From assembly GCF_006345805.1 (NCBI RefSeq), contig NC_043009.1, forward strand, positions 21,514,001 through 21,578,000: a stretch of 64,000 nt of DNA, given 5' to 3'. The DNA comes from Octopus sinensis (Eukaryota). Below are positions 6,942-45,419 of the stretch, one piece after another; positions within the stretch are counted from its first letter, which is position 1; every line of letters begins with the position of its first letter. The notes under the pieces were generated by a model. That model searched no databases and was not told where the DNA came from. It saw only the letters and a list, made by a program, of their open reading frames with translations. Position numbers and translations under genes: made by a program.

Positions 6942-6958
6942 ATGTATGTATATATATA
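6662..6958. repeat. Compound (TA)n microsatellite
   Basis: Direct reading. Confidence 0.95.
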
Positions 6959-8410: not shown

Positions 8411-8537
8411 GATATATACATATATATATAATGTGTGTATATATATATATATACATATATATATAATGTATGTATATATATATATAATGTATATATATAT
8501 ATATATATATATACATATATATATAATGTATATATAT

Positions 8538-11559: not shown

Positions 11560-11605
11560 AAACAAGGTGGAAAAAAGAGTACTCAAATACCAGTGGTAGA
11601 GTAGG

Positions 11606-12330
11606 CATGTAGTCCGCCAGTTCATTTAAAATTGTGGCCTTCGGGCAGACGGCTATGGTGTCGAGCGACTTCGAATACGTTCTCAACACCACGGTCTTCC
11701 TTTCCAGCTCTTTTACCCATTTCTTGGGAGGTGTCAACTCCCACACGAGAAATTCCTTTGTCATTGACACAAAGTTCAATAAATTCAAAGTACAAAAATA
11801 AAATAGAACACAAAAGGGAGAAGGAAAAACTCAACAGAAGAGAAGAAATAAAATAATTAACAGTTCAGAAAAGAGTTCTCTTTATTTTTATATAAATAAA
11901 TGACAGCTCGAAGAAGAGAGTACAAATTCAGACAAAGGAATCAAATTTTTCGGCCGAAAAGTGTACTCCTGGCCAAATGTCCAATTGGTAAAATGAATCC
12001 AACAAAACCGACCACAGCACTGGCTACCGCCAACGGTAACTTCAACAGCAACTGTATTTTGTTCCAATCATTCGGACGAGGATACGCCCCTCCACTATTT
12101 TTTTTCAATAACACAAAAACGGCAGCCGTCGAGAGCAGGCGAAATTGTTCCAGAGCTGGGCACAATTTACTGAAAAAGTAATTAGCATACAATAAATTAT
12201 GCACAGCTCACAACAAACAAAATCGCTCACGTCGAAAACTTTCTCTGTTTTTGTTCTTCTTTCTGTAATTGGGCGGAGCTAGCAAGCTCTCATCCACTCT
12301 GGTTCAACTGGAAGAAACTGATTAACAGCG
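11606..12330 (-). mobile_element. ORF1-only element copy A: 5' UTR and truncated ORF1 start
   Basis: MTKEFLVWELTPPKKWVKELERK...ELADYMP, then broken; head AGTGGATGAGAGCTTGCTAGCTCC at ~12300. Confidence 0.8.
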
Positions 12331-12352
12331 CATGTGCGTTAGCAAGCTACTT

Positions 12353-13445
12353 TATTTTATCTAATTTGCCACAGAGGCATTACACAGATGTAGCTTTGCG
12401 GGCTGGACATAGACATTAATGATATGAATGATGGTGATGGAACAATGATGATGATGGGAGAAGACGAATGCGCCCGCCGATTTCCGCTTCTCTAAAACAG
12501 TGTTCTTTTTTACAAAAAATCACAATGAGGCAATAAACCTCTTACTCAATATAATACAATGTACTATTTTTTTTTCTTTTAAAACACACAGAAAGTTCAG
12601 GTTACCCGGCCGACCAGCGCTCTTGCTTCATTGAAGCACTCACTCGGTTCCAGGCCAGACCACAAAGGTACAAATCTATAGGAGTCCTCCGGGAAGGAAT
12701 TCACGATCCTGCACAGATCCCTTTCCCGTAGGACCTCCGAAGCCACCTGCGAAGGTCACTCCGTGCAGGACCGAAGTCCCTCCCATTGGTCCCTCCTTTT
12801 CATTTTCCTTAATTCATTCTCAATGATTCCTCTTTTGTGGAAGAGGACAACATACCCGCCTGAGGAGGCTCGGGAAACGCCGTCCGCGTGTCACAATCCG
12901 CCGGCGGCGTCCCGTTTCTCTTTTTTCTTTTTTCCCTGGGCCGCGGGAGGTTGAGGTTCCTGTGGTGCACACAACGGGTCCTCTTTTTCTCCCGCAGCTC
13001 CCGGGTCTTTCGGTGGGTCACCATTGTCGTCCACCTTTCTTTTTCGTTTTGAGGATGTAACAACCTCCTCTTCATTCTTCTGCTTCTCTCCCTCCATTGG
13101 GGGGAGGGCAGGGAGAGATTCCACCATTAACTGCTCCGGGATCCTACTTTGGTCCCTAGGGCAGTTCTTCTTAATGTGGCCGGTCTCCAGACACAGGTGA
13201 CACTTGGGGGGCGTCCCTCGAGCATCACCGGATACCTGGACCCGGCCATCCTCAAGAAATCTGGGAAAACCAGACTTTCGGCTGATTGGGTCCATAGGGT
13301 CAAAACTGCTTTCGACCCCTCCCAATCTTCCGCAGGCAACACTTTAACATTCAGCAGCTTGGTACTGCTACCACTCACGTCGAAAACTTTCTCTGTTATT
13401 GTTCTTTTTTCTGTAATTGGGCGGAGCTAGCAAGCTCACGTCCAC
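12353..13445 (-). mobile_element. ORF1-only element copy B: internally deleted (5' head fused to mid-ORF1), CCHC knuckle, 3' UTR
   Basis: ORF 12891-13325 contains CHLCLETGHIKKNC; 3' end ...GGCAAATTAGATAAAATA|AAGTAGCTTGC. Confidence 0.8.
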
Positions 13446-14350
13446 CATGGCTCAACTCCGGGTGATAGGCCGTAGATACAAATTTTCAATAATTTTTTTC
13501 CCATATAATTTGGGAGAAACAATATTTCTTTGCTCTCAAGGGGCTGGCTTGCGAAGTCGCAAGCTTCTTGTGGGGAGTCAAATAGCAACCAGACCGTTGC
13601 ATATTTGACTCCCCGTGAGATAAATTTAATGGCTGGCATGTAGTCCGCCAGCTCATTTAAAATGGTGGCTTTCGGGAAGACGGCTATGGTGTCGAGCGAC
13701 TTCGAATACTTTCTCAACACCACGGTCTTCCTTTCCAGCTCTTTTACCCATTTCTTGGGAGGTGTCAACTCCCACACAAGAAATTCCTTTGTCATTGATA
13801 CAAAGTTCAATAAACTTCAAAGTACAAAAATGAAATAGTACACAAAAAGGAGAAGGAAAAACACAACAGAAGAGAAGAAATTATTTCTTCTCTTCTGTTG
13901 TGTTTTTCCTTCTCCTTTTTGTGTACTATTTCATTTTTGTACTTTGAAGTTTATTGAACTTTGTATCAATGACAAAGGAATTTCTTGTGTGGGAGTTGAC
14001 ACCTCCCAAGAAATGGGTAAAAGAGCTGGAAAGGAAGACCGTGGTGTTGAGAAAGTATTCGAAGTCGCTCGACACCATAGCCGTCTTCCCGAAAGCCACC
14101 ATTTTAAATGAGCTGGCGGACTACATGCCAGCCATTAAATTTATCTCACGGGGAGTCAAATATGCAACGGTCTGGTTGCTATTTGACTCCCCACAAGAAG
14201 CTTGCGACTTCGCAAGCCAGCCCCTTGAGAGCAAAGAAATATTGTTTCTCCCAAATTATATGGGAAAAAAATTATTGAAAATTTGTATCTACGGCCTATC
14301 ACCCGGAGTTGAGCCATGGTGGACGTGAGCTTGCTAGCTCCGCCCAATTA
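13414..14350. repeat. Perfect ~937-bp palindrome (468-bp arms, 1-nt centre at 13882) made of the ORF1 N-terminal half
   Basis: Identical 124-aa ORFs at 13436-13810(-) and 13954-14328(+); paired coordinates both sum to 27764. Confidence 0.95.
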
Positions 14351-14816
14351 ACAGTTGAAAAAAGAGCTCTTTTTTAAAAAAGAAATGATACCTCAGAGAA
14401 GAGAGTTCAACTTCAGACAAAGGAATCAAATTTTTCGGCCGAAAAGGGTACTCCCGGCCAAATGTCCAATTGGTAAAATGAATCCAACAAAACCGACCAC
14501 AGTACTGGCCACCGCCAACGGTAACTTCAACAGCAACTGTATTTTGTTCCAATCATTCGGACGAGGATACGCCCCTCCACTGTTTTTCTTTCAATAACAC
14601 AAAAACGGCAGCCGACGAGAGCAGGCTAAATTGTCCCAGAGCTGGGCACAATTTACTGAAAAAATAATTAGCACGCAATAAATTATGCACAGCTCACAAC
14701 AAACAAAATCACTCACGTCGTAAACTTTCTCTGTTTTTGTTCTTTTTTCTGTAATTGGACGGAGCTAGCAAGCTCACGTCCACTCTGGTTCAACTGGAAG
14801 AAACTGACTAACAGCG
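14351..14816 (-). mobile_element. ORF1-only element copy D: 5' head and UTR only
   Basis: GTGGACGTGAGCTTGCTAGCTCCGTCC head hairpin; UTR homologous to 11840-12300. Confidence 0.75.
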
Positions 14817-14838
14817 CATGTGCGTTAGCAAGCTACTT

Positions 14839-16866
14839 TATTTTATCTAATTTGCCACAGGCATTACACAGATGCAGCTTTGCGGGCTGGACATAGACAT
14901 TAATGGTATGAATGATGGTGATGGAACAATGATGATGATGGGAGAAGACGAATGCGCCCGCCGACTTCCGCTTCTCTAAAACAGTGTTCTTTTTTACAAA
15001 AAATCACAATGAGGCAATAAACCTCTTACTCAATATAATACAAGGTTCTATTTTTTTTCTTTTAAAACACACAGAAAGTTCAGGTTACCCGGCCGACCAG
15101 CGCTCTTGCTTCATTGAAGCACTCACTTGGTTCCAGGCCAGACCACACAGGTACAAATCTATAGGAGTCTTCCGTGAAGGAATTCACGATCCTGCACAGA
15201 TCACTTTCCCGTAGGACCTCCGAAGCCACCTGCGAAGGCCACTCAGGGTCCTCCGTGCAGGACCGAAGTCCCTCCCATTGGCCCCTCCTTTTCATTTTCC
15301 TTATTTCATTCTCAATAGTCCCTCCTTTGTGGAAGAGGACCACATCTCTGACCTCCGGGGGCACATCCGCCTGAGGAGGCTCGGGAGACGCCGTCTGCGT
15401 GTCACAATCCGCCTGCGGCGTCCCGTTTCTCTTTTTTCTTTTTTTCTTTTTTCCATGGGCCGCGGGAGTTTGAGGTTCCTGTAGTGCACACAACGGGTCC
15501 TCTTTTTCTCCCGCAGCTCCCGGGTCTTTCGGTGGGTCACCATTGTTGTCCACCTTTCTTTTACGTTTTGAGGATGTAACAACCTCCTCGGCACTCTTCT
15601 GCTTCTCTCCCTCCATTGGGGGGGCTGGGCAGGGAGAGATTCCACCATTAACTACTCCAGGATTCTACTTTGGTCCCTGGGGCAATTCTTCTTAATGTGG
15701 CCATCTCCAGGCACAGGTGACACTTGTGGGGGGGGCGTCCCTCAAGCATCACCGGATACCTGGACCCAGCCGTCCTCAAGAAATCTGGAAAAACCAGACT
15801 TTCGGCTGATTGGATCCATAGGGTCAAAACTGCTTTCGACCCCTCCCAATCTGCCGCAGGCAACACTTTAACATTCAGCAGCTTGGCACTGCTACCATCC
15901 AGACCCCGGCGGATAGAGTCCTCTATCCATTCGGGCTCAACTCCGGGTGGTAGGCCGCAGATCCAAGCTTTCAATAATTTTTTCCCCATATAATTTGGAA
16001 GAAACAATATTTCTTTGCCCTCAAGGGGCTGGATTGCGAAGTCGCAAGCTTCTTTTGGGGAGTCAAATAGCAACCAGATCGTTGCGTATTTCACTGCCCG
16101 TGAGATAAATTTAATGGCTGGCATGTAGTCTGCCAGCTCATTTAAAATTGTGGCCTTCGGGAAGACGGCTATGGTGTCGAGCGACTTCAAATAAGTCCTC
16201 AACACCACGGTCTTTCTTTCCAGCTCTTGTAAATATTTTTTGGGAGGTTTCAAGTCCCACACGAGAAATTCCTTTGCCATTTCAACACAAAGTTCAATTA
16301 AAGTTCAAAATGTAAGAAAATAAAATAAGACACAAAAAGGAGAAGGGAAAACACAACAGAAGAGAAGAAATACAATAAAAATAACAGTTCAAAAAAGTTC
16401 TTTTTAAAATAAACGATAGCTCGAAGAGAGTTCAAATTCAGACAAAGGAATTAATTTTTCGGCCGAAAAGGTACCCCTGGCCATTTGTCCAATTGGTAAA
16501 ATACCTTGCAAAAACAGTCCTTGGTAACCCTTGGTACTCCGTGGTAAATCCAGTGGAAAACACAAAGACAATTTCAAAACAAATTAATTTTTGCGGAGGA
16601 CTACGCCTCCTCAAAAACACAATTCTCACTGCAAAGCGAGTCTTTATAGGCGGCCACAGGCAGAAAAATGTCTGGAGCAGAGTGGAGTCTATTACTCACC
16701 AAAAAATATTAAATACAGAGCAACACACTCCACTAAGCCCTCAAAAAAATACAACAAACGCCTACCTGTAGTCGAGCCTCAAAATACAATATTTCACGAC
16801 GAAAGACATGACATCAAGCAGCAAGAACTCTCCGCCAAAAAAAAAAACACGTCCGACTTCGACGAA
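14839..16866 (-). mobile_element. ORF1-only element copy E, near full length (~2.0 kb), ORF1 frameshifted
   Basis: ORF 15648-16280 (RRM-like ATIWLLFDSPKEA...EGRPP-KCHLCLE) continues in 15080-15616 (...FNEARALVGRVT stop); ~240-nt 3' UTR; no ORF2. Confidence 0.85.
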
Positions 16867-16882
16867 GGTTAGCAAGCTACTT

Positions 16883-17319
16883 TATTTTATCTAATTTGCC
16901 ACAGGGCCATTACACAGATGTAGCTTTGCGGGCTGGACATAGACATTAATGGTATGAATGATGGTGATGGAACGAAGATGATGATGGGAGAAGACGAAAG
17001 CGCCCGCCGACTTCCGCTTCTCTAAAACAATGTTCTTTTTTCAACAAATCATAATGAGGCAATAAACCTCTTACAACGTTCTTTTAAAATATACAGAAAG
17101 TTCAGGTTTCAATATAATACAATGTTCCTTCAAAATATACAAAATGTTCAGGTCACCCGGCCGACCAGCTCTCTTGCTTCATTGAAGCACTCAGCCGGTT
17201 CCAGGCAAGACCACACAGGTACAAATCTATAGGAGTCCTCCGGGAAGGAATTCACGATCCTGCACAGATCGCTATCCATGACCTCCGCAGCCACCTGCGA
17301 AGGCCACTCAGGGTCCTCC
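16883..17319 (-). mobile_element. ORF1-only element copy F, 5'-truncated (ORF1 C-terminus and 3' UTR)
   Basis: Homologous to 14839-15255; mirrored at ~37062-37501. Confidence 0.8.
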
Positions 17320-18134
17320 GAAACAAGTAAAAGAGTAAAAGAGTAGTTACCCTTACATATAAATAAATAAATAAATCAAAACGAGTGAAAAATAATTGCA
17401 GGAAAAATTCCTTCCATCTCAACATATCTGAGAAACTCAGATTAAACCTCTAAAAATTTAGAAATTTAAAGTCTAAACCTTGAAACAAAATAAAAAAACT
17501 TATTTTTAAAATAATAATATAAATTAAAATGAAAACTCCTTATATTACATTACAAATTAAACCAATCTAAGAAATATATATATATATAATCAAAATATGC
17601 AACAAGGATATCCAGAGGTAATGCAGTACGATCGTTTCATGCAACTCCACTTAATTGAACAATGAAATCATTACATCAATTTAAAATGCAGAGCAATCCT
17701 CAGCTGCACAAAGACATAGAATTTAATTAAATTAGAACAGATGGACACATTAGTATAATTATACCTAAAATCTCCAAGAAGTTAAGGAGATAGACAAAAA
17801 ACATGCTGTCTCCACTCCAGCATAGAAGTTACTAAGGTATCAAGAAGATATTCATTGTTACAGACTCTGCCTGTCACTGATTTTTTTTGTTTATATGGGG
17901 TCAGTTTTAATTTATGGACTAGTTTATCAAATCCTTGCATATCTAAGGCTGAGAGAACAGAAGGCAATATCTGTTAGGGGTAGGGCTGAGGGAGCAGACA
18001 GACATCATAGTTGATATAGTAAAAAAAACTATTAAAAATGTTAGATGTAATTCCAGGAATAGAAGTGATGTCTTTGGGTAACGAGTGCCTCCGTAAAAAC
18101 AGATATAAATTCTCTGTCCTGACTGAAGGAAGCG

Positions 18135-18400
18135 AATATGGTTATGTCGACACAACAGCTGATATTATTTTTAAAAAACCAATGGCATAACCACGACGCG
18201 TCAATTCGTGCTATAAACACAAGACATGATACTTCTTTAGTTAACATTTGACACAAAGGGAGATTCAATACAGCATTTCCGTAATGATTGCATATCCTTA
18301 TGACAGAAATTGCAAGTTATGTAATCTTTGTTTAGAAAAGGTGTTGCATATCTTATTATTTAAAGAAAATCTGAATAAACGTTCTGAACTTATTATAAGA
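18135..18400 (+). pseudogene. Degenerate Penelope-like GIY-YIG endonuclease fragment (mirror ~35980-36245, minus)
   Basis: YVDTTADIIFKNQWHNHDAS and AYPYDRNCKLCNLCLEKVLHIL..LNKRSEL match the PLE endonuclease C-terminal pattern. Confidence 0.65.
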
Positions 18401-18517
18401 TATCACCTTGGGTTCGGAAAAACTTTTAAGAAGTACAGAGGTAAATATTTATTAGAAAATTTATAGTTGTTGATGATACCGTCAGAAACACATTTTGCGA
18501 AGTTTTCTAAACTGTAA

Positions 18518-18763
18518 TAGTGGTTCTCAACCGAGGTCCATATGGCCTTTGGGGATCCATAAAAGTTTTAGTTGTTAAAAATTATGTGCAAAAATTGGTT
18601 ATACTTCAACAATGCACAAAATGCTTTTTTATACAACTTCTAACAATATCTAATTATAAAAATATAACCGGATTTTTAAAAAAAATTGAATGGCTATGGC
18701 GATCATGTAGAACAAAATAGGAATCAAAGAGGTCCATGGGGAAAAAAGGGCTGAAAACCATTG
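18518..18763. mobile_element. hAT-type MITE (mirror 35617-35862)
   Basis: Termini TAGTGGTTCTCAACC / GGCTGAAAACCATTG; imperfect 8-bp TSD AACTGTAA / CTCTGTAA. Confidence 0.65.
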
Positions 18764-18779
18764 CTCTGTAATAATCCTT

Positions 18780-19140
18780 TCTACTATAGGCACAAGGCCT
18801 GAAATATTGAGGGAGAGGAAAGACGATCACATCGACCCCAGTACTTTATTGGTACTTAATTTATCGACCTTCGAAAGGATGAAAGGCAAAGTCGACCTCG
18901 GCAGAATTTGAACCCAGAACGTGAAGACGAACGAAATACCTATTTCTTTACTACCCACAAGGGGCTAAACACAGAGAGGACAAACAAGGACAGACAAACG
19001 GATTAAGTCGATAACATCGACCCCAGTGCGTAACTGGTACTTAATTTATCGACCCCGAAAGGATGAAAGGCAAAATCGACCTCGGCGGAATTTGAACTCA
19101 GAACGTAGCGGCAGACGAAATAACGCTAAGCATATCGACC
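18780..19140 (+). repeat. Multicopy SINE-like repeat (two units), also at 33610-33905, 35262-35600 and 62155-62760
   Basis: Recurrent CGACCCCGAAAGGATGAAAGGCAAAGTCGACCTCGGCGGAATTTGAACTCAGAACG. Confidence 0.75.
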
Positions 19141-19148
19141 GGCGTGCT

Positions 19149-19390
19149 GGAGGCGCGTGGCTTGAGGTGTTGAATTCCTTATCGTAAAATTGTGGTTTCG
19201 ATTCCTGAATCGGGCGATGCGTTGTGTTCTTCAGCAAGACACTTCATTTCACGTTGCTCACGTCCACTCAGCTGGCAGAAATGAGTCGCACTGCGACGGA
19301 CCGGCGTCCCGTCCAGATGGGGGAATATTATATGTGCCATAGAAACCGGAAAACCGGTTCTTATGAATCTATATGACTCAAGAAGTTAAC
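19149..19390 (+). mobile_element. Degenerate tRNA-derived CORE-like SINE (mirror ~35013-35254)
   Basis: GGCGCGTGGCTT head; GCAAGACACTTCATTTCACGTTGCTCACGTCCACTCAGCTGG. Confidence 0.7.
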
Positions 19391-19699
19391 TTAAAACTTA
19401 AAATATATTTGGAGCACGTATACCATCTGTTTGGAAGGAATGTTCCAAAAAGGAATGTGATACTTTATATTTTGGTATCCTCACGAAAGTATTCGCTGGT
19501 GTAACAGCGGTGTATCTAAAACCATTTATTTATAACAGAACGTCCTAAATGTTTGAAAATTTGACTGACTCAGTTGGAATGAATCTAGGAAGGAAGAGAA
19601 TTTTTTTTACTTTTTTTCCTTTTATTTTTCATTTCTATAAGCACAAATTATATCATTTATGTCCATGTCTGCTGAGGCTTACTTAATTAAATTTTAATT

Positions 19700-20450
19700 A
19701 ATTTGTTCGTTGTTAGTAAGTAGGACATGCCACGAATTTGTGATAGGCATTCATGGGTCTCGAAATACCATGGTTCTGCGTCTGAAGAATTTTGTGTCAG
19801 CTGCTGATGGCAGTGCAGTGTCGGTTGTGGCTGCACAGACCCACACGCGAGTGACAGTCTTGCATGCAGCGAATGCATTTGAAGATATTCTCTACCGGTG
19901 CTACCGAGTTTTCCTTTCTTCGAGCGCGGGGGAAAGTTTCAGTTTCTCTTCCTCTCGCTCCATCCTCTTGTGTAGTATTCGCCTCCAGCGTTGGCGATCA
20001 TTTGTGACCTCCTCCCATCTTAGGACATCCAGATCTATTGACTTCATATCTCTATTGCCGACTTCCTTGAAGCGAAAATGAGGTCGTCCTCATGCTCTGG
20101 TGCCGGTGGCCAGTTCCCGATGCAGGAGGCCTTTTGGGATCCTTCCATCCAGCATAAAATATATGTGCCCGAGCCAGCGCGGACGGCACTGTTGGAGCAG
20201 GGTGAATATGCTGGGCATCTTGGCGCGGTTGAAGGCTTCAATGTTAGTAACTCGGTCGGTCCACTTGATATCCAAAATGATTCTCAAGCTACGAAGGTGG
20301 AAGACGTGGAAGATACTGCACTTATCTGAAGTAGAGGCCCCATGTCGCGCTGCTGCAAGGTAGCGTGCTAAGGACGCACGCCTTGTAGACAGCAATCTTG
20401 ATGTTTGTTGTCAGTTTTTTTGTTCTCCCAGACTCTCTTCCTAGAATAAC
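19700..20450 (-). pseudogene. RTE (BovB-like) LINE ORF2 C-terminus with terminal zinc finger (mirror 33953-34700, plus)
   Basis: LRIILDIKWTDRVTN...RWLGHI...GRIPK.LL..EL..G.R..GRP, followed by C..C...CHSRVGL.SH. Confidence 0.85.
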
Positions 20451-20619
20451 CCATATTTGGGTTCGGAAGGGGGGGGGCTGCCCCCACCCACCCTTCCGAA
20501 CCCAAATATGGGATTTACAGCATATTACGAGGTCACAGTACTTGATTCCACGCAAAAAATCAGTTTTTTTTTTTTTTTTTTAGTGAAAATCGTGCGGGTG
20601 TTAATCTGTAATTTTACCA

Positions 20620-20980
20620 ATATTTTTTGGTGAGTAAAAGACTCCACTCTGTTCCAGACATTTTCCTGCCTGTGGTCGAGCGTAAAGACTCACTTTACAG
20701 TGAGAATTGTGTTTTTGAGGAGGCGTAGTCCCTCCGCAAAAATTAATTTGTTTGCTTCTGAAATTGTCTTTGTGTTTTTCACTGAATTTACCACGGAGTA
20801 CCAAGGATTACCGAGGACTGGTTTTGCAAGGTATTTTACCAATTGGACATTTGGCCAGGAGTACCTTTTTCGGCCGAGAAATTAATTCCTTTGTCTGAAT
20901 TTGAACTCTCTTCTTCTTCGAGCTATCGTTTATTTTAAAAAGAACTTTTTTGAACTGTTATTTTTATTGTACTTCTTCTC
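20620..20980 (+). mobile_element. Fragment of the ORF1-only element 5' UTR (variant 2)
   Basis: Homologous to 16380-16710 (reverse) and 37660-37800. Confidence 0.7.
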
Positions 20981-30139: not shown

Positions 30140-30335
30140 TCGTCATCATCATCGTTTAATGTCCGTTTTCCATGCTAGCATGGGTTGGACGGTTCAACCG
30201 AGATCTGGGAAGCCAGAAGGCTGCACCAGGCTCCAGTCTGATCTGGCAGTGTTTCTACAGCTGGATACCCTTCCTAATGCCAACCACTCCGTGAGTGTAG
30301 TGGGTAATTTTTACGTGCAACTGGCACAGGTGCCA
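30140..30335 (-). mobile_element. RTE 3' tail fragment
   Basis: (ATC)n then GTTTAATGTCCGTTTTCCATGCTAGCATGGGTTGGACGG; homologous to 26330-26445 and 53221-53549. Confidence 0.75.
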
Positions 30336-30356
30336 GGCAAGCATACAGTAAACGTG

Positions 30357-32397
30357 GCCAGTTTAGCATACAGTAAACGTGGCCATTTACAATTTAGTAT
30401 GCTATCTGTTGCCAATTCTAGACCATAGCTCTAACCCTAACATAAACCATAACAAGCCATAGTCTACATAGTTACAAGCAGATAGACACTCTACTGACCT
30501 TCTCACCTTTATCTCATAATTTTGTTGATCCAAACACCTGATTAATAATTAAAGAAAGTAGTTATTTTACTAAGACTGTTCAAATTGATTATGTGTATTT
30601 CATTGGGAACATGACTATAAAAGAATTTAGCATCAAATTTGATTTCAACTTACATTTTCCACAGCTATTCTAACAACAGTGTAATAATACTTCTGTAACC
30701 TCTCAGAGGAAACATGACTCCTCCTTCACTCCTCTCCACCATTCATTTATGGTTTGAGAATAATTCTATAATTGTTGTAAACTGGAATGGAACTTACTCT
30801 CTTTCTGCTCACATCCATTCTCCATTTAATGCTACTTGGTTTGCATCTTTTAGAGAGATAGATTAGATATAATAAACTCAAAGAGCAACTAGAAAGTGAA
30901 AGTAGTATCTAACTTAGGATGTCTCATAGATAGTGGTGGCAATGGTGTTGGAGGTGGTAGATGTGGTTATCATGGCAGTGGTGGTGGTGGTGTAGTGGTG
31001 ACAGTGGATGTGTATGAGGGCAGCAATTATAGTGTTGGTGTTTTTGTAGAGGTGGTGGTGGTGGTGGTGGCGGCGGCAGTGGATGATGATGATAATGATG
31101 ATGATAGTAGTAGTAGCATTGTTAATGTTAGGATGTCTCATGGATAGTAGTGTTGAAAATATTGCAGAGTGTAGTGGTGGTGAAATTGGTGATTTTGAAT
31201 ACGATCCTGGTATTGGTCTTGGGGTTGTGGTTGCAGAAGATGGTTGTGGTGGTGGCATTGGAGGTTGTAGTAATGGTTGTAGTGGTGGTTGTGAAGATGA
31301 TTCTGATATTGATAGTCTTTGCATTGAGGTGGTGGCAGAGTCAGAGTAAATAATAAGAGCCCCGTTAACACAAGATTCTTAAATTTCGGAGATCATAAGA
31401 TAGAGAGCAAGAAGTTAAAAGTTCCAATACTGGCCCAATTCCTACACCCCATATTCTTCAACTATTTTATAAGAAAGGGGTTAATAGCAGGATAGGGATT
31501 CAGCTTAAAAATAAATTGTATAACAAAAAATACATAAATAAATTACTGCTCCAACGATGTAATTTTAGTATGTGTGTATGTGTGTGTGTATGTATGGATC
31601 AAAACAGTTTGATTCAAATTCTGCGGTACTTATATATTCATACATACATATACATGTAGATGTATATAACATATATATATTGTATGTAAACATCTTTTAT
31701 ATATATATAATGTATGCATCTATAATACACACACATTATAAATATATACACATATATGCATATGCATTAGAATATGTGTGTATAGGTGTGTATATATATA
31801 TATATGCATATGTTTGTATACATGTGTGTGTGAGTGTGTGTGGGTGTAAAAATAAATATATGCATATATCAATATATGTGTTTGTGTGTATGTGTCAAAG
31901 TTTCAAATCCTATAAAGCAATGCAAACAATAGAAAATAATTTAAACGTGGCCATTTACAAACGAATAAGTTTCAAATTCTATAAAGCAATGCAAACAATA
32001 GAAAATAATTTAAACACTAATTTTATATATACTCAGCCTTTCAAAAGAATTTAGCTGTTTAGGATCTACTCAAATTTTATACGATGCCAAGCGAATTTAG
32101 CTGTTTACGATAAGCCGATGTTTACGTTACAAAACGAATAAGCAGAATGATATCAGCTCAAAACAAAGAATACCATTGGTTAAAATTCGAATAATTAAAC
32201 TACGTTAAACTTGGAAATTACAATTTCGTTTTCAATTTGGTTTACAATAATGTTTTCTTTTGACACATTCTACCAGTTTCAAATTGTTTAGTTAACTAGA
32301 AAATTCTGTCCATCTTTTAGAAAAGATCCGAGAAGAAGTACAATAAAAATAACAGTTCAAAAAAGTTCTTTTTAAAATAAACGATAGCTCGAAGAAG
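30357..32397. repeat. Inner right arm of inverted duplication
   Basis: Reverse complement of 20913-22944, with one ~45-bp indel in the low-complexity part. Confidence 0.95.
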
Positions 32398-32639
32398 CAT
32401 ATTACAGCATATTACGAGGTCACAGTACTTGATTCCACGCAAAAAATCAGAGTTCTTTTTTGTGTGAAAATTCCGGGGTGGGTGGGTTAATCCCCCCCCC
32501 CTCCGGACCAATTCCGAACCAAAATATGGGATTTCCAGCATATTAGGAGGTTAGGGTACTTGATTCCACGCAAAAAATCCGAGTTTTTTTTTTTTTTCTT
32601 CGTGAAAATCGTGCGGGTGTTAATCTGTAATTTTACCCA

Positions 32640-33114
32640 AAATTCAATATTTCACGACGAAAGACGTGACATCAAGCAGCAAGAACTCTCCGCCAAAAAA
32701 ACACGTCCGACTTTGACGAAGGTTAGCAAGCTACTTTATTTTATCTAATTTGCCACAGGGCCATTACACAGATGTAGCTTTGCGGGCTGGACATAGACAT
32801 TAATGGTATAAATGATGGTGATGGAACGAGGATGATGATGGGAGAAGACGAAAGCGCCCGCCGACTTCCGTTTCTCTAAAACAATGTTCTTTTTTCCACA
32901 AATCATAATGAGGCAATAAACCTCTTACAATGTTCTTTTAAAATATACAGAAAGTTCAGGTTTCAATATAATACAATGTTCCTTCAAATATACAAAAAGT
33001 AGAGGTCACCCGGCCGACCAGCGCTCTTGTTTCATCGAAGCACTCACTCAAAATAAACACGTCCGACTTCGACGAAGGTTAACAAGCTACCTACTACACA
33101 GCCACTCCTGCGCC
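32640..33114 (-). mobile_element. Deleted ORF1-only element (head + 3' UTR + next head) preceded by the 5' part of a SINE
   Basis: 33114->33077 reads GGCGCAGGAGTGGCTGTGTAGTAGGTAGCTTGTTAACC, directly followed by head TTCGTCGAAGTCGGACGTG. Confidence 0.75.
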
Positions 33115-33952
33115 TAATATATAATTATAAACCTATGAGAAAGGAAGAAAATCCTTTTATTTCATTGATTTACAGTTGTTTCATCGAAAATCATCTCGTG
33201 AGCATTACCACATTATCATGCAACAATATATGCAACCACTGATACATGAGGTGTCACAGAAACAAAATCGAAAATCGATTTTTCAGAATCATACATAATA
33301 ATTATTTGCTGCGGACACCTAAGTGAACGATAATTCACACCTATACATGTTACACACCAAAGAAAAAAAAAAAAAAACAGAACAAACCAGGTTGAGTTGA
33401 CCGGTCAAGAAGAATGATGAATTGTAAAAAAAAAAGTAAGAAAATAAAACATAAAACAAAAGTTTTTGCTTTTAGACAATATAATGAAATATGGTCTCGT
33501 CAACAGTATCTGTATTAAAGATACTTTGTAGTCTTTTTGTCTGCCACTTTATAGCAGTCAGCCGTAAAATTGGCATTAACGGAGTTGGATGGTTTTAACC
33601 ACAGTATCTAGCAGTTACACGAGATTATATCGACTCCAGTGCGTAACTGGTACTTATTTAATCGCACAAGGCGGCGAGCTGGCAGAAACGTTACCACGCC
33701 GGGCGAAATGCGTAGCCGTTGTTCGTCTGCCGTTACATTCTGAATTTAAATTTCGCCGAGGTCGACTTTGCCTTTCATCCTTTCGGGGTCGATAAATTAA
33801 GTACCAGTTACGCACTGGGGTCGATGTAATGGACTTAATCCGTTTGTCTGTCCTTGTTTGTCCCCTCTATGTTTAGCCCCTTGTGGGTAGTAAAGAAATA
33901 GGTACTTATTTAATCGCACGCGCAGAGGCAACAAAGAAAATAGATTTCCATT

Positions 33953-36900
33953 GTTATTCTAGGAAGAGAGTCTGGGAGAACAAAGAAACTGACAACAAAC
34001 ATCAAGATTGCTGTCTACAAGGCGTGCGTCCTTAGCACGCTACCTTGCAGCAGCGCGACATGGGGCCTCTACTTCAGATAAGTGCAGTATCTTCCACGTC
34101 TTCCACCTTCGTAGCTTGAGAATCATTTTGGATATCAAGTGGACCGACCGAGTTACTAACATTGAAGCCTTCAACCGCGCCAAGATGCCCAGCATATTCA
34201 CCCTGCTCCAACAGTGCCGTCCGCGCTGGCTCGGGCACATATATTTTATGCTGGATGGAAGGATCCCAAAAGGCCTCCTGCATCGGGAACTGGCCACCGG
34301 CACCAGAGCATGAGGACGACCTCATTTTCGCTTCAAGGAAGTCGGCAATAGAGATATGAAGTCAATAGATCTGGATGTCCTAAGATGGGAGGAGGTCACA
34401 AATGATCGCCAACGCTGGAGGCGAATACTACACAAGAGGATGGAGCGAGAGGAAGAGAAACTGAAACTTTCCCCCGCGCTCGAAGAAAGGAAAACTCGGT
34501 AGCACCGGTAGAGAATATCTTCAAATGCATTCGCTGCATGCAAGACTGTCACTCGCGTGTGGGTCTGTGCAGCCACAACCGACACTGCACTGCCATCAGC
34601 AGCTGACACAAAATTCTTCAGACGCAGAACCATGGTATTTCGAGACCCATGAATGCCTATCACAAATTCGTGGCATGTCCTACTTACTAACAACGAACAA
34701 ATTAATTAAAATTTAATTAAGTAAGCCTCAGCAGACATGGACATAAATGATATAATTTGTGCTTATAGAAATGAAAAATAAAAGGAAAAAAGTAAAAAAA
34801 ATTCTCTTCCTTCCTAGATTCATTCCAACTGAGTCCGTCAAATTTTCAAACATTTAGGACGTTCTGTTATAAATAAATGGTTTTAGATACACCGCTGTTA
34901 CACCAGCGAATACTTTCGTGAGGATACCAAAATATAAAGTATCACATTCCTTTTTGGAACATTCCTTCCAAACAGATGGTATACGTGCTCCAAACATATT
35001 TTAAGTTTTAAGTTAACTTCTTGAGTCATATAGATTCATAAGAACCGGTTTTCCGGTTTCTATGGCACATATAATATTCCCCCATCTGGACGGGACGCCG
35101 GTCCGTCGCAGGGCGACTCATTTCTGCCAGCTGAGTGGACGTGAGCAACGTGAAATGAAATGTCTTGCTGAAGAACACAACGCATCGCCCGATTCAGGAA
35201 TCGAAACCACAATTTTACGATAAGGAATTCAACACCTCAAGCCACGCGCCTCCAGCACGCCGGTCGATATGCTTAGCGTTATTTCGTCTGCCGCTACGTT
35301 CTGAGTTCAAATTCCGCCGAGATCGACTTTGCCTTTCATCCTTTCGGGGTCGATAAATTAAGTACCAGTTACGCACTGGGGTCGATGTTATCGACTTAAT
35401 CCGTTTGTCTGTCCTTGTTTGTCTTCTCTGTGCTTAGCCCCTTGTGGGTAGTAAAGAAATAGGTATTTCGTTCGTCTTCACGTTCTGGGTTCAAATTCTG
35501 CCGAGGTCGACTTTGCCTTTCATCCTTTCGATAAAGTACTGGGGTCGATGTGATCGTCTTTCCTCTCCCTCAATATTTCAGGCCTTGTGCCTATAGTAGA
35601 AAGGATTATTACAGAGCAATGGTTTTCAGCCCTTTTTCCCCCATGGACCTCTTTGATTCCTATTTTGTTCTACATGATTGCCATAGCCATTCAATTTTTT
35701 TTTTAAATCCGGTTATATTTTTATAATTAGATATTGTTAGAAGTTGTATAAAAAAGCATTTTGTGCATTGTTGAAGTATAACCAATTTTTGCACATAGTT
35801 TTTAACAACTAAAACTTTTATGGATCCCCAAAGGCCATATGGACCTCGGTTGAGAACCACTATTACAGTTTAGAAAACTTCGCAAAATGTGTTTCTGACG
35901 GTATCATCAACAACTATAAATTTTCTAATAAATATTTACCTCTGTACTTCTTAAAAGTTTTTCCGAACCCAAGGTGATATCTTATAATAAGTTCAGAACG
36001 TTTATTCAGATTTTCTTTAAATAATAAGATATGCAACACCTTTTCTAAACAAAGATTACATAACTTGCAATTTCTGTCATAAGGATATGCAATCATTACA
36101 GAAATGCTGTATTGAATCTCCCTTTGTGTCAAATGTTAACTAAAGAAGTATCATGTCTTGTGTTTATAGCACGAATTGACGCGTCGTGGTTATGCCATTG
36201 GTTTTTTTAAAATAATATCAGCTGTTGTGTCGACATAACCATATTCGCTTCCTTCAGTCAGGACAGAGAATTTATATCTGTTTTTACGGAGGCACTCGTT
36301 ACCCAAAGACATCACTTCTATTCCTGGAATTACATCTTCTAACATTTTTAATAGTTTTTTTTACTATATCAACTATGATGTCTGTCTGCTCCCTCAGCCC
36401 TACCCCTAACAGATATTGCCTTCTGTTCTCTCAGCCTTAGATATGCAAGGATTTGATAAACTAGTCTATAAATTAAAACTGACCCCATATAAACAAAAAA
36501 AATCAGTGACAGGCAGAGTCTGTAACAATGAATATCTTCTTGATACCTTAGTAACTTCTATGCTGGAGTGGAGACAGCATGTTTTTTGTCTATCTCCTTA
36601 ACTTCTTGGAGATTTTAGGTATAATTATACTAATGTGTCCATCTGTTCTAATTTAATTAAATTCTATGTCTTTGTGCAGCTGAGGATTGCTCTGCATTTT
36701 AAATTGATGTAATGATTGCATTGTTCAATTAAGTGGAGTTGCATGAAACGATCGTACTGCATTACCTCTGGATATCCTTGTTGCATATTTTGATTATATA
36801 TATATATATTTCTTAGATTGGTTTAATTTGTAATGTAATATAAGGAGTTTTCATTTTAATTTATATTATTATTTTAAAAATAAGTTTTTTTATTTTGTTT

Positions 36901-37570
36901 CAAGGTTTAGACTTTAAATTTCTAAATTTTTAGAGGTTTAATCTGAGTTTCTCAGATATGTTGAGATGGAAGGAATTTTTCCTGCAATTATTTTTCACTC
37001 GTTTTGATTTATTTATTTATTTATATGTAAGGGTAACTACTCTTTTACTCTTTTACTTGTTTCGGAGGACCCTGAGTGGCCTTCGCAGGTGGCTGCGGAG
37101 GTCATGGGATAGCGATCTGTGCAGGATCGTGAATTCCTTCCCGGAGGACTCCTATAGATTTGTACCTGTGTGGTCTTGCCTGGAACCGGCTGAGTGCTTC
37201 AATGAAGCAAGAGAGCTGGTCGGCCGGGTGACCTGAACATTTTGTATATTTTGAAGGAACATTGTATTATATTGAAACCTGAACTTTCTGTATATTTTAA
37301 AAGAACGTTGTAAGAGGTTTATTGCCTCATTATGATTTGTTGAAAAAAGAACATTGTTTTAGAGAAGCGGAAGTCGGCGGGCGCTTTCGTCTTCTCCCAT
37401 CATCATCTTCGTTCCATCACCATCATTCATACCATTAATGTCTATGTCCAGCCCGCAAAGCTACATCTGTGTAATGGCCCTGTGGCAAATTAGATAAAAT
37501 AAAGTAGCTTGCTAACCTTCGTCGAAGTCGGACGTGTTTTTTTTGGCGGAGAGTTCTTGCTGCTTGATGT
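33953..37570. repeat. Outer right arm of inverted duplication
   Basis: Reverse complement of 16820-20450 with scattered substitutions and indels. Confidence 0.95.
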
Positions 37571-37860
37571 CGTGAAATATTGAACTTTGAGGCTCGACTA
37601 CAGGTAGGCGTTTGTTGTATTTTTTTGAGGGCTTAGTGGAGTGTGTTACCCTGTATTTAATATTTTTTGGTGAGTAATAGACTCCACTCTGCTCCAGACA
37701 TTTGCCTGCCTGTGGCCGCCTATAAAGACTCACTTTGCAGTGAGAGTTGTGTTTTTGAGGAGGCGTAGCCCCTCTGCAAAAATTAATTTCTTTGCGAAAA
37801 TTATCTTCGTGTCTGCGGATTACCAAGGAGTAACAAGGCAGGAGGGACTGTTTTTGCAAA

Positions 37861-39850
37861 GTGGACGTGAGTGTGTTGGCTCTGGCCAATTTTGAACTGG
37901 AAAAAAAAAAAGAACAACATCAGCATAAGACCGTAGTGGTAGGTGGATTTATTTTCGGTTTTGCTGGGTGTAATTTGTCAAATAGTAATTGTTTGTGTGT
38001 TGGTAAATTTCACCCAGCTCCGAGGCAATTCTGCCTGCTCTCGGCGGCTGCTGTTTTGTGAATTTAGTGTGAATATTTTGGATTCATTAAAAAAAAAAAA
38101 CAGTGGAAGGGCGTATCCTCGCCCGAATGATTAGAACCTGTTACAGTTGCTGTTGCAGCTACCGTTGACTGTAGCCAGTATTATGTTTGGATTTATTGGA
38201 TTTCTTTTACCAATTACGGGAAAAAACGATTCATACCAAGGAACCTATGTACATTTGGCCAGGAGTACCTTTTCGGCCGAAAATTAATTTATTTTTTTGC
38301 CTGTTATTTTTTTGAACTGTTATTTTTATTTTATTTCTTCCCTTCTGTTGTGTCTTTCCTTCTTCTTTTTATGTGTCTTTCCTCGTTTTTCTATTTTTGA
38401 ACTATATTTGAACTTTATTTAAAAATGGCGAAGGAATTTCTTGTGTCGGACTTGACACCTCCCAAAAAATGGTTAAAAGAGCTTGAAAGAAAGACGGTGG
38501 TGCTGAGGACTTATTCGAAGTCGCTCGACACCATAGCCGTCTTCCCGAGTGCCACAATTTTGAATGAGCTGGCAGATTACATGCCAGCCATTAAATTTTT
38601 TTCACGGGGAGTGAAGTATGCAGCGGTCTGGTTGCTGTTTGACTCCCCCCAAGAAGCTTGCGATTTTGCAAGTCAGCCACTCGAGGAAATCATGTTTCTT
38701 CCAAGCTACTGTGGAAAGAAATTATTGAGAGCTTGGATCTGCGGTTTGCCACCCGGAGTTGAGCCCGAGTGGATAGAGGACTTTATCCGCCGGGGTCTGG
38801 GTGGTAGCAGTACCAAGCGGCTGATTGGGAGAGGTCAAAAGCTGTTTTGACCCTATGGACCCAATCAGCCGAAAGTCTGGTCTTTCCAGATTTTTTTAGG
38901 ATGGCCGGGTCTAGGTATCCGGTGATGCTCGAGGGACGCCCCCCCCCCCAAGTGTCACCTGTGTCTGGAGACCGGCCACATTAAGAAAAACTGCCCCAAG
39001 GACCAAAATAGGATCCTGGAGCAGTTAATAGTGGAATCTCTCCCTGCTCCCTCAATGGAGAGAGAGAAGGAGGAGGATGACGAGGAGGTTTCTACATCCT
39101 CGAAAAAAACGAAAACGAAAGGTGTACAACAATGGTTGACCACCGAAGGACCCGAGGGCTGCAAGAGAGAAGGAGGACCTGTTGCGTGCGTCACAGGAAA
39201 CTCACCCTCTCGCGGCCCAAGGGAAAAAGAAAAACGGGACATCGCCGGCGGGTTGTGACACGCTGCCGGCGTGTCCCAATCCTCCTCCGTCGGGTGTGCC
39301 GTTGGAGGATGAATTTGTGGTCCTCTTCCACAAAGGAGGAACCATAGAAGAAGAAGTAAAGAAAATGGAAAGGAGGGGGCCGATGGGAGGGACTTCTGTC
39401 CTGAGTGGCCTTCACAGGTGGCTGCGGAGGTCCTATGGGATAGTGATCTGTGCAGGATCATAAATTCCTTCCCGGAGGACTCCTATAAATTTATACCTGT
39501 GTGGTCCGGCCTGGAACCGGGTGCATGCTTCAATGAAGCAAGGATACTGGTCGGCCGGATAACCTGAACGAGTCTAAAAAATGTGAAGCATGTGACTTTT
39601 TGTCTGTTTTAAAAAAGAAAAAAGAATTCTGAACACTGGGTTGTTTAAGCAAGAGGTTTATTGCCTCATTGTGTTTTTGGGGGAAAAGGAAAAAAGAACA
39701 TTGTTTTAGAGAAGCGAAAGTCGGCGGGCGCTTTTCGTGTTCTCCCATCATCATCATTTTTGCCTCACCATCATTCATACCGTTAATGTCCATGTCCAGC
39801 CCGCAAAGCTGCCATCTGTGTAACGCCCTTGTGACAAATTATATGAAATA
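37861..39850 (+). mobile_element. ORF1-only element copy G, diverged full-length copy (~2.0 kb); ORF1 38425-39567 disrupted
   Basis: Head GTGGACGTGAG; MAKEFLVSDLTPPKKW...; CHLCLETGHIKKNC encoded near 38955; stop TGA at 39565-39567; 3' UTR; then SINE. Confidence 0.85.
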
Positions 39851-45352: not shown

Positions 45353-45354
45353 TA

Positions 45355-45419
<65 letters not shown>

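What the first reader, a model, noticed from the sequence alone, without database searches (positions are those of the whole stretch)
11606..39850. ORF1-only (half-LINE-like) element that appears to insert specifically into a tRNA-derived SINE head and build tandem arrays
Seen: a ~2-kb element with at least 8 copies or fragments. It encodes one ~400-aa protein (RRM-like region, CX2CX4HX4C knuckle CHLCLETGHIKKNC, conserved C-terminus ...FNEARALVGRVT), a ~240-nt 3' UTR and no RT or endonuclease. Every intact 3' end is followed by AAGTAGCTTGCT(A/T)AC: 12352, 14838, 16882 and 32736 on minus, 37502 and 39851 on plus. That motif lies inside the head of the SINE at 44970 (GTGTGGT-AAGTAGCTTGCTTACC). 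At 39851 the element is followed by the rest of that SINE. At 33114->33077 the SINE 5' part lies directly upstream of an element head (19/23 match to 44970-44992). Established: Tx1-clade non-LTR elements are sequence-specific and target multicopy RNA genes or other repeats; HAL1 elements are ORF1-only derivatives of L1-type elements. Inference: a non-autonomous, SINE-targeting (or tRNA-targeting) element whose ~15-nt TSD regenerates the target, so successive insertions stack head-to-tail. I do not know of a description of this combination.
Basis: partly seen in the sequence, partly recalled or inferred. Interest (0 to 1): 0.88.

Follow-up and report, generated by a model that had tools for sequence, protein, structure and literature searches.

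The report
ORF1-only LINE derivative inside octopus SINE
An octopus genome region holds head-to-tail stacks of a 2-kb retrotransposon that keeps only the RNA-binding ORF1 of an L1/Tx1-type LINE and sits at one exact spot in the head of a SINE; this is a neat new variant of behaviour already known from site-specific Tx1 elements.

Summary
A ~2.0–2.35-kb element (5'UTR, one ~400-codon ORF, 241-nt 3'UTR, no RT or endonuclease) occurs in head-to-tail arrays. Every 3' end is followed by AAGTAGCTTGCT(A/T)AC, a 15-mer that lies in a SINE head.

New evidence:
- The ORF is a true LINE ORF1. Its remote homologues in Octopus and Argonauta sit directly upstream of APE+RT+zf-RVT ORF2s.
- It is predicted to fold as two RRM-like domains plus a CCHC knuckle.
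- Its N-terminal half has Ka/Ks of about 0.2 between subfamilies.
- The element shares a 3'-terminal motif (GCCCTTGTGGC..AATAAA) with those autonomous LINEs.
- One of those LINEs has a clean 16-bp TSD, the same size class as the 15-mer.
- SINE positions 1–37 precede an element head in the window and also in O. sinensis. SINE position 23 to the end follows one tail.

Caveats:
- Much of the copy count comes from a 6–7-kb inverted segmental duplication and a 2.5-kb tandem duplication.
- Only about 3–5 junctions are independent.
- No partner LINE was found.
- No genome-wide flank census was possible.
- Tx1-Mar/SINEU-3 in crocodilians already shows TE-targeted insertion with a 16-bp TSD and TSD-sandwiched tandem copies.

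Verdict: real, mostly as interpreted, and a new variant of a known kind.

The parts
14824..16867 (-). Reference full-length copy (2044 bp). It has 5' head A (CTTCGTCGAAGTCGGACGTG...), the ORF1 remains at 16280-15080, a 241-nt 3'UTR and the 15-mer at 14838-14824.
   Evidence: The ORF is broken by at least 2 frameshifts and one TAG.
16868..17320 (-). 5'-truncated copy: the last 58 codons, the 3'UTR and the 15-mer at 16882-16868. It lies directly upstream of the reference copy.
   Evidence: Its upstream flank is an inverted SINE 3'-end piece, not a SINE head.
12338..14823 (-). Third array unit, with 5' head B (GCACATGCGCTG...). It contains an inverted internal duplicate at 13882-14315 and a piece of its own 5'UTR inside the ORF. 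Its 15-mer is at 12352-12338.
11604..12337 (-). Fourth array unit, with head B. It is cut off in ORF1 (codon ~55) by an unrelated inverted SINE-like end and (TA)n.
37063..37516 (+). Mirror copy of 17320-16868. It is part of the inverted segmental duplication.
37517..39865 (+). Diverged full-length copy (2349 bp, about 80% identical to the reference). It has head A plus a longer 5'UTR, ORF1 remains at 38425-39567, a 3'UTR and the 15-mer AAGTAGCTTGCTTAC at 39851-39865.
39851..40248 (+). SINE from its position 23 to its 3' end. It follows the tail in register, and the 15-mer is shared.
   Evidence: (89% identity to 44977-45361).
33078..33114 (-). SINE 5' part, positions 1-37 (GGCGCAGGAGTGGCTGTGTAGTAGGTAGCTTGTTAAC). 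It ends exactly where head A begins.
   Evidence: The SINE 5' start is confirmed by L002:4890 and L001:9452.
32722..33077 (-). Internally deleted copy: 28 nt of head A joined to the last 16 codons, the 3'UTR and the 15-mer at 32736-32722.
32638..32721 (-). Start of a further head-A copy directly after that 15-mer. It is interrupted by an unrelated ~240-bp stretch and resumes at 32395-32330. The mirror fragment lies at 20598-20980 (+).
44966..45361 (+). Slightly 5'-truncated SINE copy with an unoccupied target at 44977-44991.

Best explanation
This is a non-autonomous non-LTR retrotransposon of an octopod. It keeps only ORF1 of an L1/Tx1-type LINE: two RRM-like domains, one CCHC knuckle and a loosely constrained tail. 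It also keeps that LINE group's 3'-terminal recognition motif.

Inferred mechanism:
1. The element's RNA is bound by its own ORF1 protein.
2. The RNA is reverse-transcribed in trans by the ORF2 protein (APE endonuclease + RT) of a related autonomous LINE that has not been found.
3. ORF2p nicks the bottom strand of the SINE head between ...GTGTGGT and AAGTAGC..., and the top strand 15-16 nt further on.
4. Each insertion is therefore flanked by two copies of AAGTAGCTTGCT(T/A)AC.
5. Both copies are again targets, so later insertions land next to earlier ones and build head-to-tail arrays whose units are separated by exactly one 15-mer.
6. Insertion splits the SINE between its A-box-like and B-box-like motifs.

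Shown: the anatomy, ORF1 homology and fold, selection on ORF1, the shared 3' motif, a 16-bp TSD in a relative, and in-register SINE halves.

Inferred: trans-mobilisation, the nick positions, sequential insertion, and specificity across the whole genome.
For: 1. ORF1 identity.
- A profile search found 74 relatives, nearly all from Octopus or Argonauta.
- In L002, L003 and L004 the homologue is followed by ORF2 with Exo_endo_phos, RVT_1 and zf-RVT domains. L005 shows an ORF2 start after the closest such ORF1.
- The AF2 model has mean pLDDT 79, and above 90 over most of residues 11-130. Foldseek hits are tandem-RRM proteins.
- hhalign to the RBD_ZCCHC3_2nd region of a fish LINE protein gives E = 2.5e-5.

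2. ORF1-only as the propagating form.
- Copies only 80-92% identical share the same stop, 3'UTR and tail.
- Ka/Ks is 0.19-0.23 over 175-189 N-terminal codons, Fisher p 1e-9 to 1e-13.

3. Shared 3' end.
- GCCCTTGTGGC..AATAAA closes the 3'UTR of the autonomous LINEs in L002, L004 and L012 and of every window copy. The alignment scores 32 against 12.8 ± 2.5 for shuffles, with 0 of 2000 shuffles as high.
- What follows the motif differs between families, so the 15-mer behaves as flank.

4. TSD size. The Argonauta LINE is flanked by a perfect 16-bp repeat, TCTTCAACTTATGTTT.

5. Target.
- SINE 1-37 lies directly before head A at 33114 and before head B in O. sinensis (L001:9452). SINE 23-to-end follows the tail at 39851.
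- Heads A and B both abut the same 15-mer.
- Head B is conserved between species (p = 0.007). It is not SINE-derived (p = 0.17 and 0.93).

6. Precedent for the whole mechanism: PMC4494074.
Against: - All window evidence comes from one cluster reshaped by a large inverted duplication and a tandem duplication. The window could hold as few as one original SINE hit.
- The 5'-truncated copy at 17320/37063 is preceded by an inverted SINE 3' end, not by the SINE head.
- The two 15-mers around the deleted copy at 33092 and 32736 differ at 2 of 15 positions.
- Nearly all element-side 15-mers carry ...TAAC, whereas the SINE consensus has ...TTAC.
- The O. vulgaris autonomous relative forms a 5273-bp tandem array whose junction is not repeated at the array's upstream edge. 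Arrays in this group can therefore arise another way.
- No partner LINE with the same 3'UTR was found. The only RT in the window is 26% identical to the relatives' ORF2.
- The C-terminal 96 codons show no significant constraint.
Confidence: 0.62

Rival explanations
1. The 15-mer is part of the element. On this view it was picked up once from a SINE by 3' read-through past the AATAAA, or by template switching. Insertion is not SINE-specific. Arrays arise in a single TPRT event by end-to-end RT template jumping between element RNAs. The SINE-flanked copies descend from, or recombined with, one ancestral SINE-embedded master.
For: - AATAAA lies 13 nt before the end of the 15-mer. A pol II transcript would therefore carry about that much flank.
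- Element-side 15-mers are uniformly the ...TAAC variant.
- The 3'UTR holds GCAAAGCT(A/G)C, which is complementary to the 15-mer.
- The autonomous O. vulgaris relative forms arrays without a visible TSD sandwich.
- The 5'-truncated copy lacks the SINE head upstream.
Against: - No tail in the window is followed by unrelated DNA.
- SINE 1-37 precedes two different element 5' ends, in two species, in exact register.
- In related LINEs the sequence after the conserved 3' motif differs by family, and in Argonauta it is a TSD.
- The hairpin is not thermodynamically distinctive, with z from -0.1 to -2.6.
Confidence: 0.2
2. One chance insertion into a SINE was multiplied by local segmental duplication, inversion and unequal crossing-over, or by misassembly of a repeat-rich region. 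On this view the apparent specificity and the stacking are local artefacts.
For: - Inverted arms 16506-22944 and 37859-30357 are 97.7-99.3% identical.
- There is a 2.5-kb tandem duplication at 92% identity and an internal palindrome at 13881/13882.
- The related O. vulgaris array ends in an assembly gap.
Against: - Array units differ in structure (head A against head B, different 5'UTR deletions) and are only 80-92% identical.
- An independent O. sinensis copy has the same SINE 1-37/element junction.
- The 39851 copy belongs to a different subfamily and carries the TTAC form of the 15-mer.
Confidence: 0.12
3. The element is not a LINE derivative. It would instead be a gag-only LTR-type element, a Penelope-like element or a retrozyme, whose partial tandem ('pseudo-LTR') structure explains the truncated-plus-full pairs.
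For: - A CCHC knuckle is also typical of Gag.
- A 5'-truncated copy followed by a full copy resembles PLE pseudo-LTRs.
Against: - There are no long terminal repeats beyond the tandem units.
- Rfam finds no hammerhead or other ribozyme.
- The homologous ORFs sit upstream of APE+RT+zf-RVT ORF2s with 16-bp TSDs.
- The predicted fold is tandem RRM, not capsid.
Confidence: 0.03

Closest known systems
SINEU-3 and Tx1-Mar LINEs of crocodilians (Kojima 2015, PMC4494074)
   Same: A non-autonomous element and its Tx1-type LINE insert at one sequence inside another transposon. The TSD is 16 bp. Tandem copies 'sandwiching a TSD' are attributed to sequential insertion.
   Different: - The target there is a Mariner DNA transposon; here it is a SINE head.
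- SINEU-3 is a short, non-coding, snRNA-headed SINE; this element is 2 kb and encodes a selected ORF1.
- Tx1-clade membership of the octopus partner is untested.
HAL1 (half-L1) of mammals (Smit 1999 and Bao & Jurka 2010, cited in PMC5753468)
   Same: A non-autonomous LINE derivative that encodes only ORF1p and must borrow ORF2p.
   Different: - HAL1 derives from mammalian L1 with a coiled-coil/RRM/CTD ORF1. It is poly(A)-tailed and is not known to be site-specific.
- This element has a double-RRM + CCHC ORF1, no poly(A), and a fixed flank.
Site-specific Tx1-clade LINEs: Tx1L in Tx1D, Keno in U2 snRNA genes, Kibi/Koshi in microsatellites (Kojima & Fujiwara 2004, as summarised in PMC4494074)
   Same: APE-type LINEs whose copies are found in one repeated target. 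The O. sinensis relative in L002 is likewise flanked on both sides by ATTAATT(ATT)n.
   Different: Those elements are autonomous, and a SINE head has not been listed among their targets in the texts read here.
L1-Tx1 LINE families annotated in Octopus vulgaris (PMC13282606)
   Same: The same host group and the same broad LINE class. That paper reports 13 families with 421 recent insertions, and SINEs at 11.6% of the genome.
   Different: That paper does not describe ORF1-only derivatives, SINE-head targeting or arrays.

Membership tests
LINE ORF1 of the L1/Tx1 superfamily (RRM + CCHC type) | Homology to ORFs that lie directly upstream of an APE+RT ORF2 | tested here: met
   - Profile hits P0004, P0009, P0013 and P0003 have E from 1e-10 to 1e-17.
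- Their loci carry Exo_endo_phos, RVT_1 and zf-RVT downstream.
LINE ORF1 of the L1/Tx1 superfamily (RRM + CCHC type) | RRM-type RNA-binding fold followed by a CX2CX4HX4C knuckle | tested here: met
   - AF2 model with mean pLDDT 79. The top Foldseek hits are tandem-RRM proteins, E about 1e-4.
- zf-CCHC is weak in the window copy and passes in relatives.
- This is a prediction, not a solved structure.
Autonomous LINE | Encodes its own reverse transcriptase and endonuclease | tested here: not met
   In all copies only 241 nt lie between the ORF1 stop and the tail. tblastn with ORF2 of relatives hits nothing in the element.
HAL1-like (ORF1-only non-autonomous LINE derivative) | The ORF1-only unit is itself the amplified form, with ORF1 kept under selection | tested here: met
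   - Subfamilies 80% identical share the same architecture.
- Ka/Ks is about 0.2 in the N-terminal 190 codons.
- The linker and C-terminal part are not constrained.
HAL1-like (ORF1-only non-autonomous LINE derivative) | 3' end shared with an autonomous partner LINE | tested here: inconclusive
   A 3'-terminal motif of about 25 nt is shared with three autonomous relatives. The rest of the 3'UTR is not alignable, and no close partner was found.
HAL1 proper | Derived from mammalian L1 | tested here: not met
   The host is an octopod, and ORF1 is of a different type.
Tx1 clade and dependants (site-specific) | RT of the mobilising LINE groups with Tx1 in a phylogeny | not tested
   - No partner is known, and no reference RT set is available here.
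- Source names of ORF2 homologues were uninformative.
- The literature labels octopus L1-like LINEs 'L1-Tx1'.
Tx1 clade and dependants (site-specific) | Copies flanked on both sides by the same position of a repeated target | tested here: inconclusive
   Met at 33114, 39851 and L001:9452. The sample is tiny and clustered, and one 5' junction (17320) does not fit. No octopus DNA exists in the scannable collections.
Tx1 clade and dependants (site-specific) | TSD of about 16 bp, and tandem copies separated by exactly one TSD | tested here: met
   - One 15-mer lies between units at 12338, 14824, 16868 and 32722.
- The Argonauta relative has a 16-bp TSD.
tRNA-derived SINE (the target) | Head recognisable as a tRNA | tested here: not met
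   - ARAGORN and Rfam give no tRNA hit, even at E up to 10.
- Only A-box-like (TGGCTGTGTGG) and B-box-like (GGTTCAGTCCC) motifs are seen by eye.
- Octopus tRNA-derived SINEs are on record (Ohshima & Okada 1994, cited in PMC10886601).
Penelope-like element / retrozyme | Hammerhead ribozyme in the terminal repeat; GIY-YIG/PLE RT in relatives | tested here: not met
   Rfam finds nothing. Relatives carry APE-type ORF2.
LTR retrotransposon (gag-only derivative) | Long terminal direct repeats | tested here: not met
   Self-BLAST shows only whole-unit tandem repeats and no LTRs.

The most novel reading that the evidence does not exclude
Octopods may carry a lineage of ORF1-only 'half-LINEs' that has lived for a long time as a parasite of a Tx1-like LINE while homing, genome-wide, to one 15-16-nt site between the A-box-like and B-box-like motifs of the most abundant SINE. 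Each insertion would then silence a SINE copy and recreate two fresh targets, giving self-extending arrays. Such a coding, site-specific hyperparasite of a SINE has not been described in the texts I could read.
Probability: 0.45. Interest if true: 0.6.

Novelty: new variant of a known kind. Interest (0 to 1): 0.45.

Why it matters
If the specificity holds genome-wide, it adds three things.
- SINE heads would join the list of targets of site-specific LINE machinery.
- It would show that an ORF1-only (HAL1-like) lifestyle evolved outside mammals, in a double-RRM + CCHC ORF1 lineage.
- It would give a clean natural example of TSD-regenerated targets building tandem arrays.

It would also point to an octopus endonuclease with a defined 15-16-bp recognition site. 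And it could help explain local array and palindrome formation in SINE-rich cephalopod genomes.

It does not overturn any concept. Each ingredient has a published precedent.

Tried and rejected
- Metagenome scans. Neither the tail (AAATAAAGTAGCTTGCTWAC) nor, as a control, the SINE head was found. The collection holds no octopus DNA, so no flank census was possible.
- Exact look-up of the window's 210-aa ORF: not on record.
- First AF2 run on a shallow alignment: pLDDT 34, discarded.
- PDB sequence search with the family profile: only CCHC knuckles.
- MAFFT alignment A1, which forced C-terminal fragments onto the N-terminal domain: discarded.
- 3'UTR-wide similarity to the O. vulgaris LINE: not significant. 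Only the terminal motif is significant.
- Idea that head B, or the sequence upstream of the 15-mer, is further SINE-derived sequence: rejected (p = 0.17, 0.93 and 0.10).
- Terminal hairpin pairing the 15-mer with GCAAAGCTAC: present in all copies, but not distinctive and without covariation.
- LTR, PLE and retrozyme readings: rejected.
- ZCCHC3 as an ORF1-derived gene: the paper I checked does not say so, so the claim was dropped.
- ORF2 homologue names gave no clade assignment.
- The end of the O. vulgaris array could not be seen because of an assembly gap.

Full report
**1. What is in the sequence**

The window is AT-rich, repeat-rich eukaryotic DNA. The only close protein relative of the element's ORF is an Octopus sinensis protein, and remoter relatives are from Octopus and Argonauta, so the source is an octopod.

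The pattern AAGTAGCTTGCTWAC occurs seven times against zero in shuffles.

A full unit consists of:
- a 5'UTR of about 590 nt (longer in some copies);
- one reading frame of about 400 codons;
- a 241-nt 3'UTR ending ...GGCAAATTAGATAAAATAAA;
- the 15-mer.

No copy has an intact frame. The reference copy has at least two frameshifts and a TAG stop. There is no RT or endonuclease coding capacity in the element.

**2. How many independent copies**

Self-comparison shows that the region is heavily rearranged.
- 16506-20450 and 20913-22944 are mirrored at 37859-33953 and 32397-30357 (97.7% and 99.3% identity). This is a palindrome with 6-7-kb arms whose outer edges lie inside two oppositely oriented element copies.
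- 11855-13373 repeats 14346-15897 (92% identity).
- 32638-33046 is 95% identical to 16780-17193.
- One unit carries an internal palindrome (13882-14315 against 13881-13449) and a piece of its own 5'UTR inside the ORF.

The minus-strand array reads, in order:
- 17320-16868, 5'-truncated;
- 16867-14824, head A;
- 14823-12338, head B;
- 12337-11604, head B, cut off.

The plus-strand array reads 37063-37516 (mirror copy), then 37517-39865 (a diverged subfamily), then the SINE remainder.

A third small array on the minus strand reads:
- SINE 1-37 at 33114-33078;
- an internally deleted copy at 33077-32722;
- a head-A stump at 32721-32638.

I count about three to five independent junctions, not six to eight.

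**3. What the ORF is**

Pfam sees only a weak CCHC knuckle, and a word-indexed search finds one homologue. An exhaustive profile search with the N-terminal alignment found 74 relatives. Those with names are from O. sinensis, O. bimaculoides, O. vulgaris and Argonauta hians.

Evidence that these are LINE ORF1s:
- In three genomic loci the homologous ORF is followed by an ORF2 with Exo_endo_phos, RVT_1 and zf-RVT.
- The closest such ORF1 (P0003) is followed by an ORF2 start that matches the others.

With the 73-sequence alignment AlphaFold gives a confident model: mean pLDDT 79, and above 90 over most of residues 11-130. Its best PDB matches are tandem-RRM proteins such as SFPQ/NONO, hnRNP A1 UP1, Hrp1 and Npl3. 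The family profile also aligns with the second 'RBD_ZCCHC3' domain of the ORF1 part of a fish LINE protein.

The ORF is therefore a LINE ORF1 of the double-RRM + CCHC kind, and the element is an ORF1-only derivative.

**4. Is the ORF1-only form the thing that spread?**

The reference-type copies and the 38425-39567 copy are only about 80% identical, yet share the same stop, 3'UTR and tail.
- Over the N-terminal 175-189 codons Ka/Ks is 0.19-0.23 between subfamilies and against the O. sinensis copy (Fisher p 1e-9 to 1e-13).
- The linker and the last 96 codons are not significantly constrained.

This is the HAL1 situation. It argues against independent deletion products.

**5. Is the 15-mer element or flank?**

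The last ~25 nt before the 15-mer match the 3' ends of the autonomous relatives:
- window copies: GCCCTGTGGCAAATTAGATAAAATAAA;
- diverged window copy: CCCTTGTGACAAATTATATGAAATAAA;
- L002: CCCTTGTGGCCAATAAA;
- L004: CCCTTGTGGCGAATAAA;
- L012: CCCTTGTGGGTAAATAAA.

The alignment scores 32 against 12.8 ± 2.5 for shuffles, with 0 of 2000 shuffles reaching it. The motif is found almost only at such ends.

What follows the motif differs by family:
- In Argonauta, after 6 nt, it is one arm of a perfect 16-bp TSD (TCTTCAACTTATGTTT) that also precedes the element's 5' end.
- In O. sinensis L002 both flanks are ATTAATT(ATT)n.

The 15-mer therefore sits where relatives have target DNA, and it has the size of their TSD.

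Two different 5' ends both abut it: head A (CTTCGTCGAAGTCGG...) and head B (GCACATGCG...). Head B is conserved with O. sinensis (p = 0.007) and is not SINE-derived.

**6. The SINE**

- 39851-40248 continues from the 15-mer through the rest of a SINE (89% identity to 44977-45361).
- 33114-33078 is the first 37 nt of the SINE and ends where head A starts.
- In O. sinensis (L001) the same 37 nt end where a head-B element starts.
- A complete, diverged SINE in L002 confirms that GGCGC...GG.GT is the SINE's 5' end.

The site lies between an A-box-like and a B-box-like motif. This was judged by eye only. ARAGORN and Rfam do not recognise a tRNA here. The SINE at 44977 carries an unoccupied site.

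**7. Mechanism and rivals**

The best-fitting account is target-primed reverse transcription by a borrowed ORF2p at a fixed site in the SINE head. A 15-16-bp stagger duplicates the site, and repeated use builds arrays.

Exactly this has been described for Tx1-Mar LINEs and SINEU-3 in crocodilians: a 16-bp TSD inside Mariner-N4_AMi, with tandem copies 'sandwiching a TSD' by sequential insertion.

Points that do not fit cleanly:
- The truncated copy at 17320/37063 abuts an inverted SINE 3' end rather than a SINE head.
- The element-side 15-mers are nearly all ...TAAC, against ...TTAC in the SINE.
- The O. vulgaris autonomous relative forms a 5273-bp array (at least 3 units, 99.4% identical) with no TSD visible at its upstream edge, and its far end is an assembly gap.

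These points keep two rivals alive:
- The 15-mer is element-borne and the arrays arise by RT template jumping.
- The apparent stacking is mostly local duplication.

The LTR, Penelope and retrozyme readings are excluded.

**8. What could not be done**

- No octopus genome could be searched at the DNA level. Scans for both the tail and the SINE head returned nothing. The decisive flank census is therefore outstanding.
- No partner LINE was identified. The only RT in the window belongs to another clade.
- Tx1 against L1 placement was not tested. A recent O. vulgaris annotation lists 13 'L1-Tx1' families with 421 recent insertions, and SINEs at 11.6% of the genome.

**9. Verdict**

Every component has a precedent: HAL1, site-specific Tx1 elements, and TSD-sandwiched arrays. 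The combination of a selected ORF1-only element homing to a SINE head in a cephalopod appears undescribed in what I could read. It is best rated a new variant of a known kind, of moderate interest.

Noticed in passing
window 16506-22944 and 30357-37859: Large inverted segmental duplication with arms 97.7-99.3% identical and a spacer of about 7.4 kb. The outer edges fall inside two oppositely oriented element copies, which suggests recombination between them, or an assembly artefact. The identical 160-aa 'ORFs' at 21248-21739 and 31572-32054 are just mirrored low-complexity DNA.
   Followed up: partly
window 13449-14315: Perfect-centre palindrome at 13881/13882. Element positions 529-967 are present in both orientations inside one array unit. 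The same unit has about 70 nt of its own 5'UTR inserted in the ORF near 13430-13370.
   Followed up: partly
window 14880-14893 and equivalents in all copies: The 3'UTR segment GCAAAGCT(A/G)C is complementary, with one bulge, to GTAGCTTGC of the 15-mer and of the target's top strand. The predicted hairpin is not energetically distinctive and shows no covariation.
   Followed up: yes
window 7766-8413 (-); repeats 4166-4909 and 6716-7465: RT fragment (RVT_1, E = 1.6e-20) of a different LINE clade, only 26-27% identical to the ORF2 of the ORF1 relatives. It is not the partner.
   Followed up: partly
window 46495-47016 (-): ORF with a Pif1 helicase 2B domain (E = 1.2e-14), possibly a Helitron remnant.
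   Followed up: no
L003 2445-17026 / L012 4446-19184 (O. vulgaris OX597840.1): Autonomous ORF1+ORF2 LINE in a head-to-tail array. The period is 5273 bp, with at least 3 units at 99.2-99.6% identity. The array ends in a run of N (an assembly gap).
   Followed up: partly
L004 7790-13260 (Argonauta hians): A 5.4-kb LINE with ORF1 and a broken ORF2, flanked by a perfect 16-bp TSD (TCTTCAACTTATGTTT). A second, isolated copy of the 3' motif lies at 7108-7125.
   Followed up: yes
L002 5716-5778 and 11343-11378 (O. sinensis): The LINE is flanked on both sides by ATTAATT(ATT)n. This is either a long TSD or microsatellite targeting of the Kibi/Koshi kind.
   Followed up: partly
window 16848-16867; L002 ~5790-5812; L003 7719-7730: The 5' ends of several families of this LINE group share a GGACGT(G/T) motif within the first ~30 nt, possibly a conserved start region.
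   Followed up: no
L006-L011 (Logan, SRR11869384-94): Contigs of about 1.7 kb with a 294-aa ORF1 homologue and no visible ORF2 start. They may be transcripts of another ORF1-only element in an unidentified cephalopod sample.
   Followed up: no
window 17321-17350 (+) and 37033-37062 (-): The last ~26 nt of a SINE, in inverted orientation, abut the 5'-truncated element copy. This junction is unexplained by the targeting model.
   Followed up: partly
window 47265-47943: Tandem repeat with a period of about 166 bp (91-93% identity between copies).
   Followed up: no
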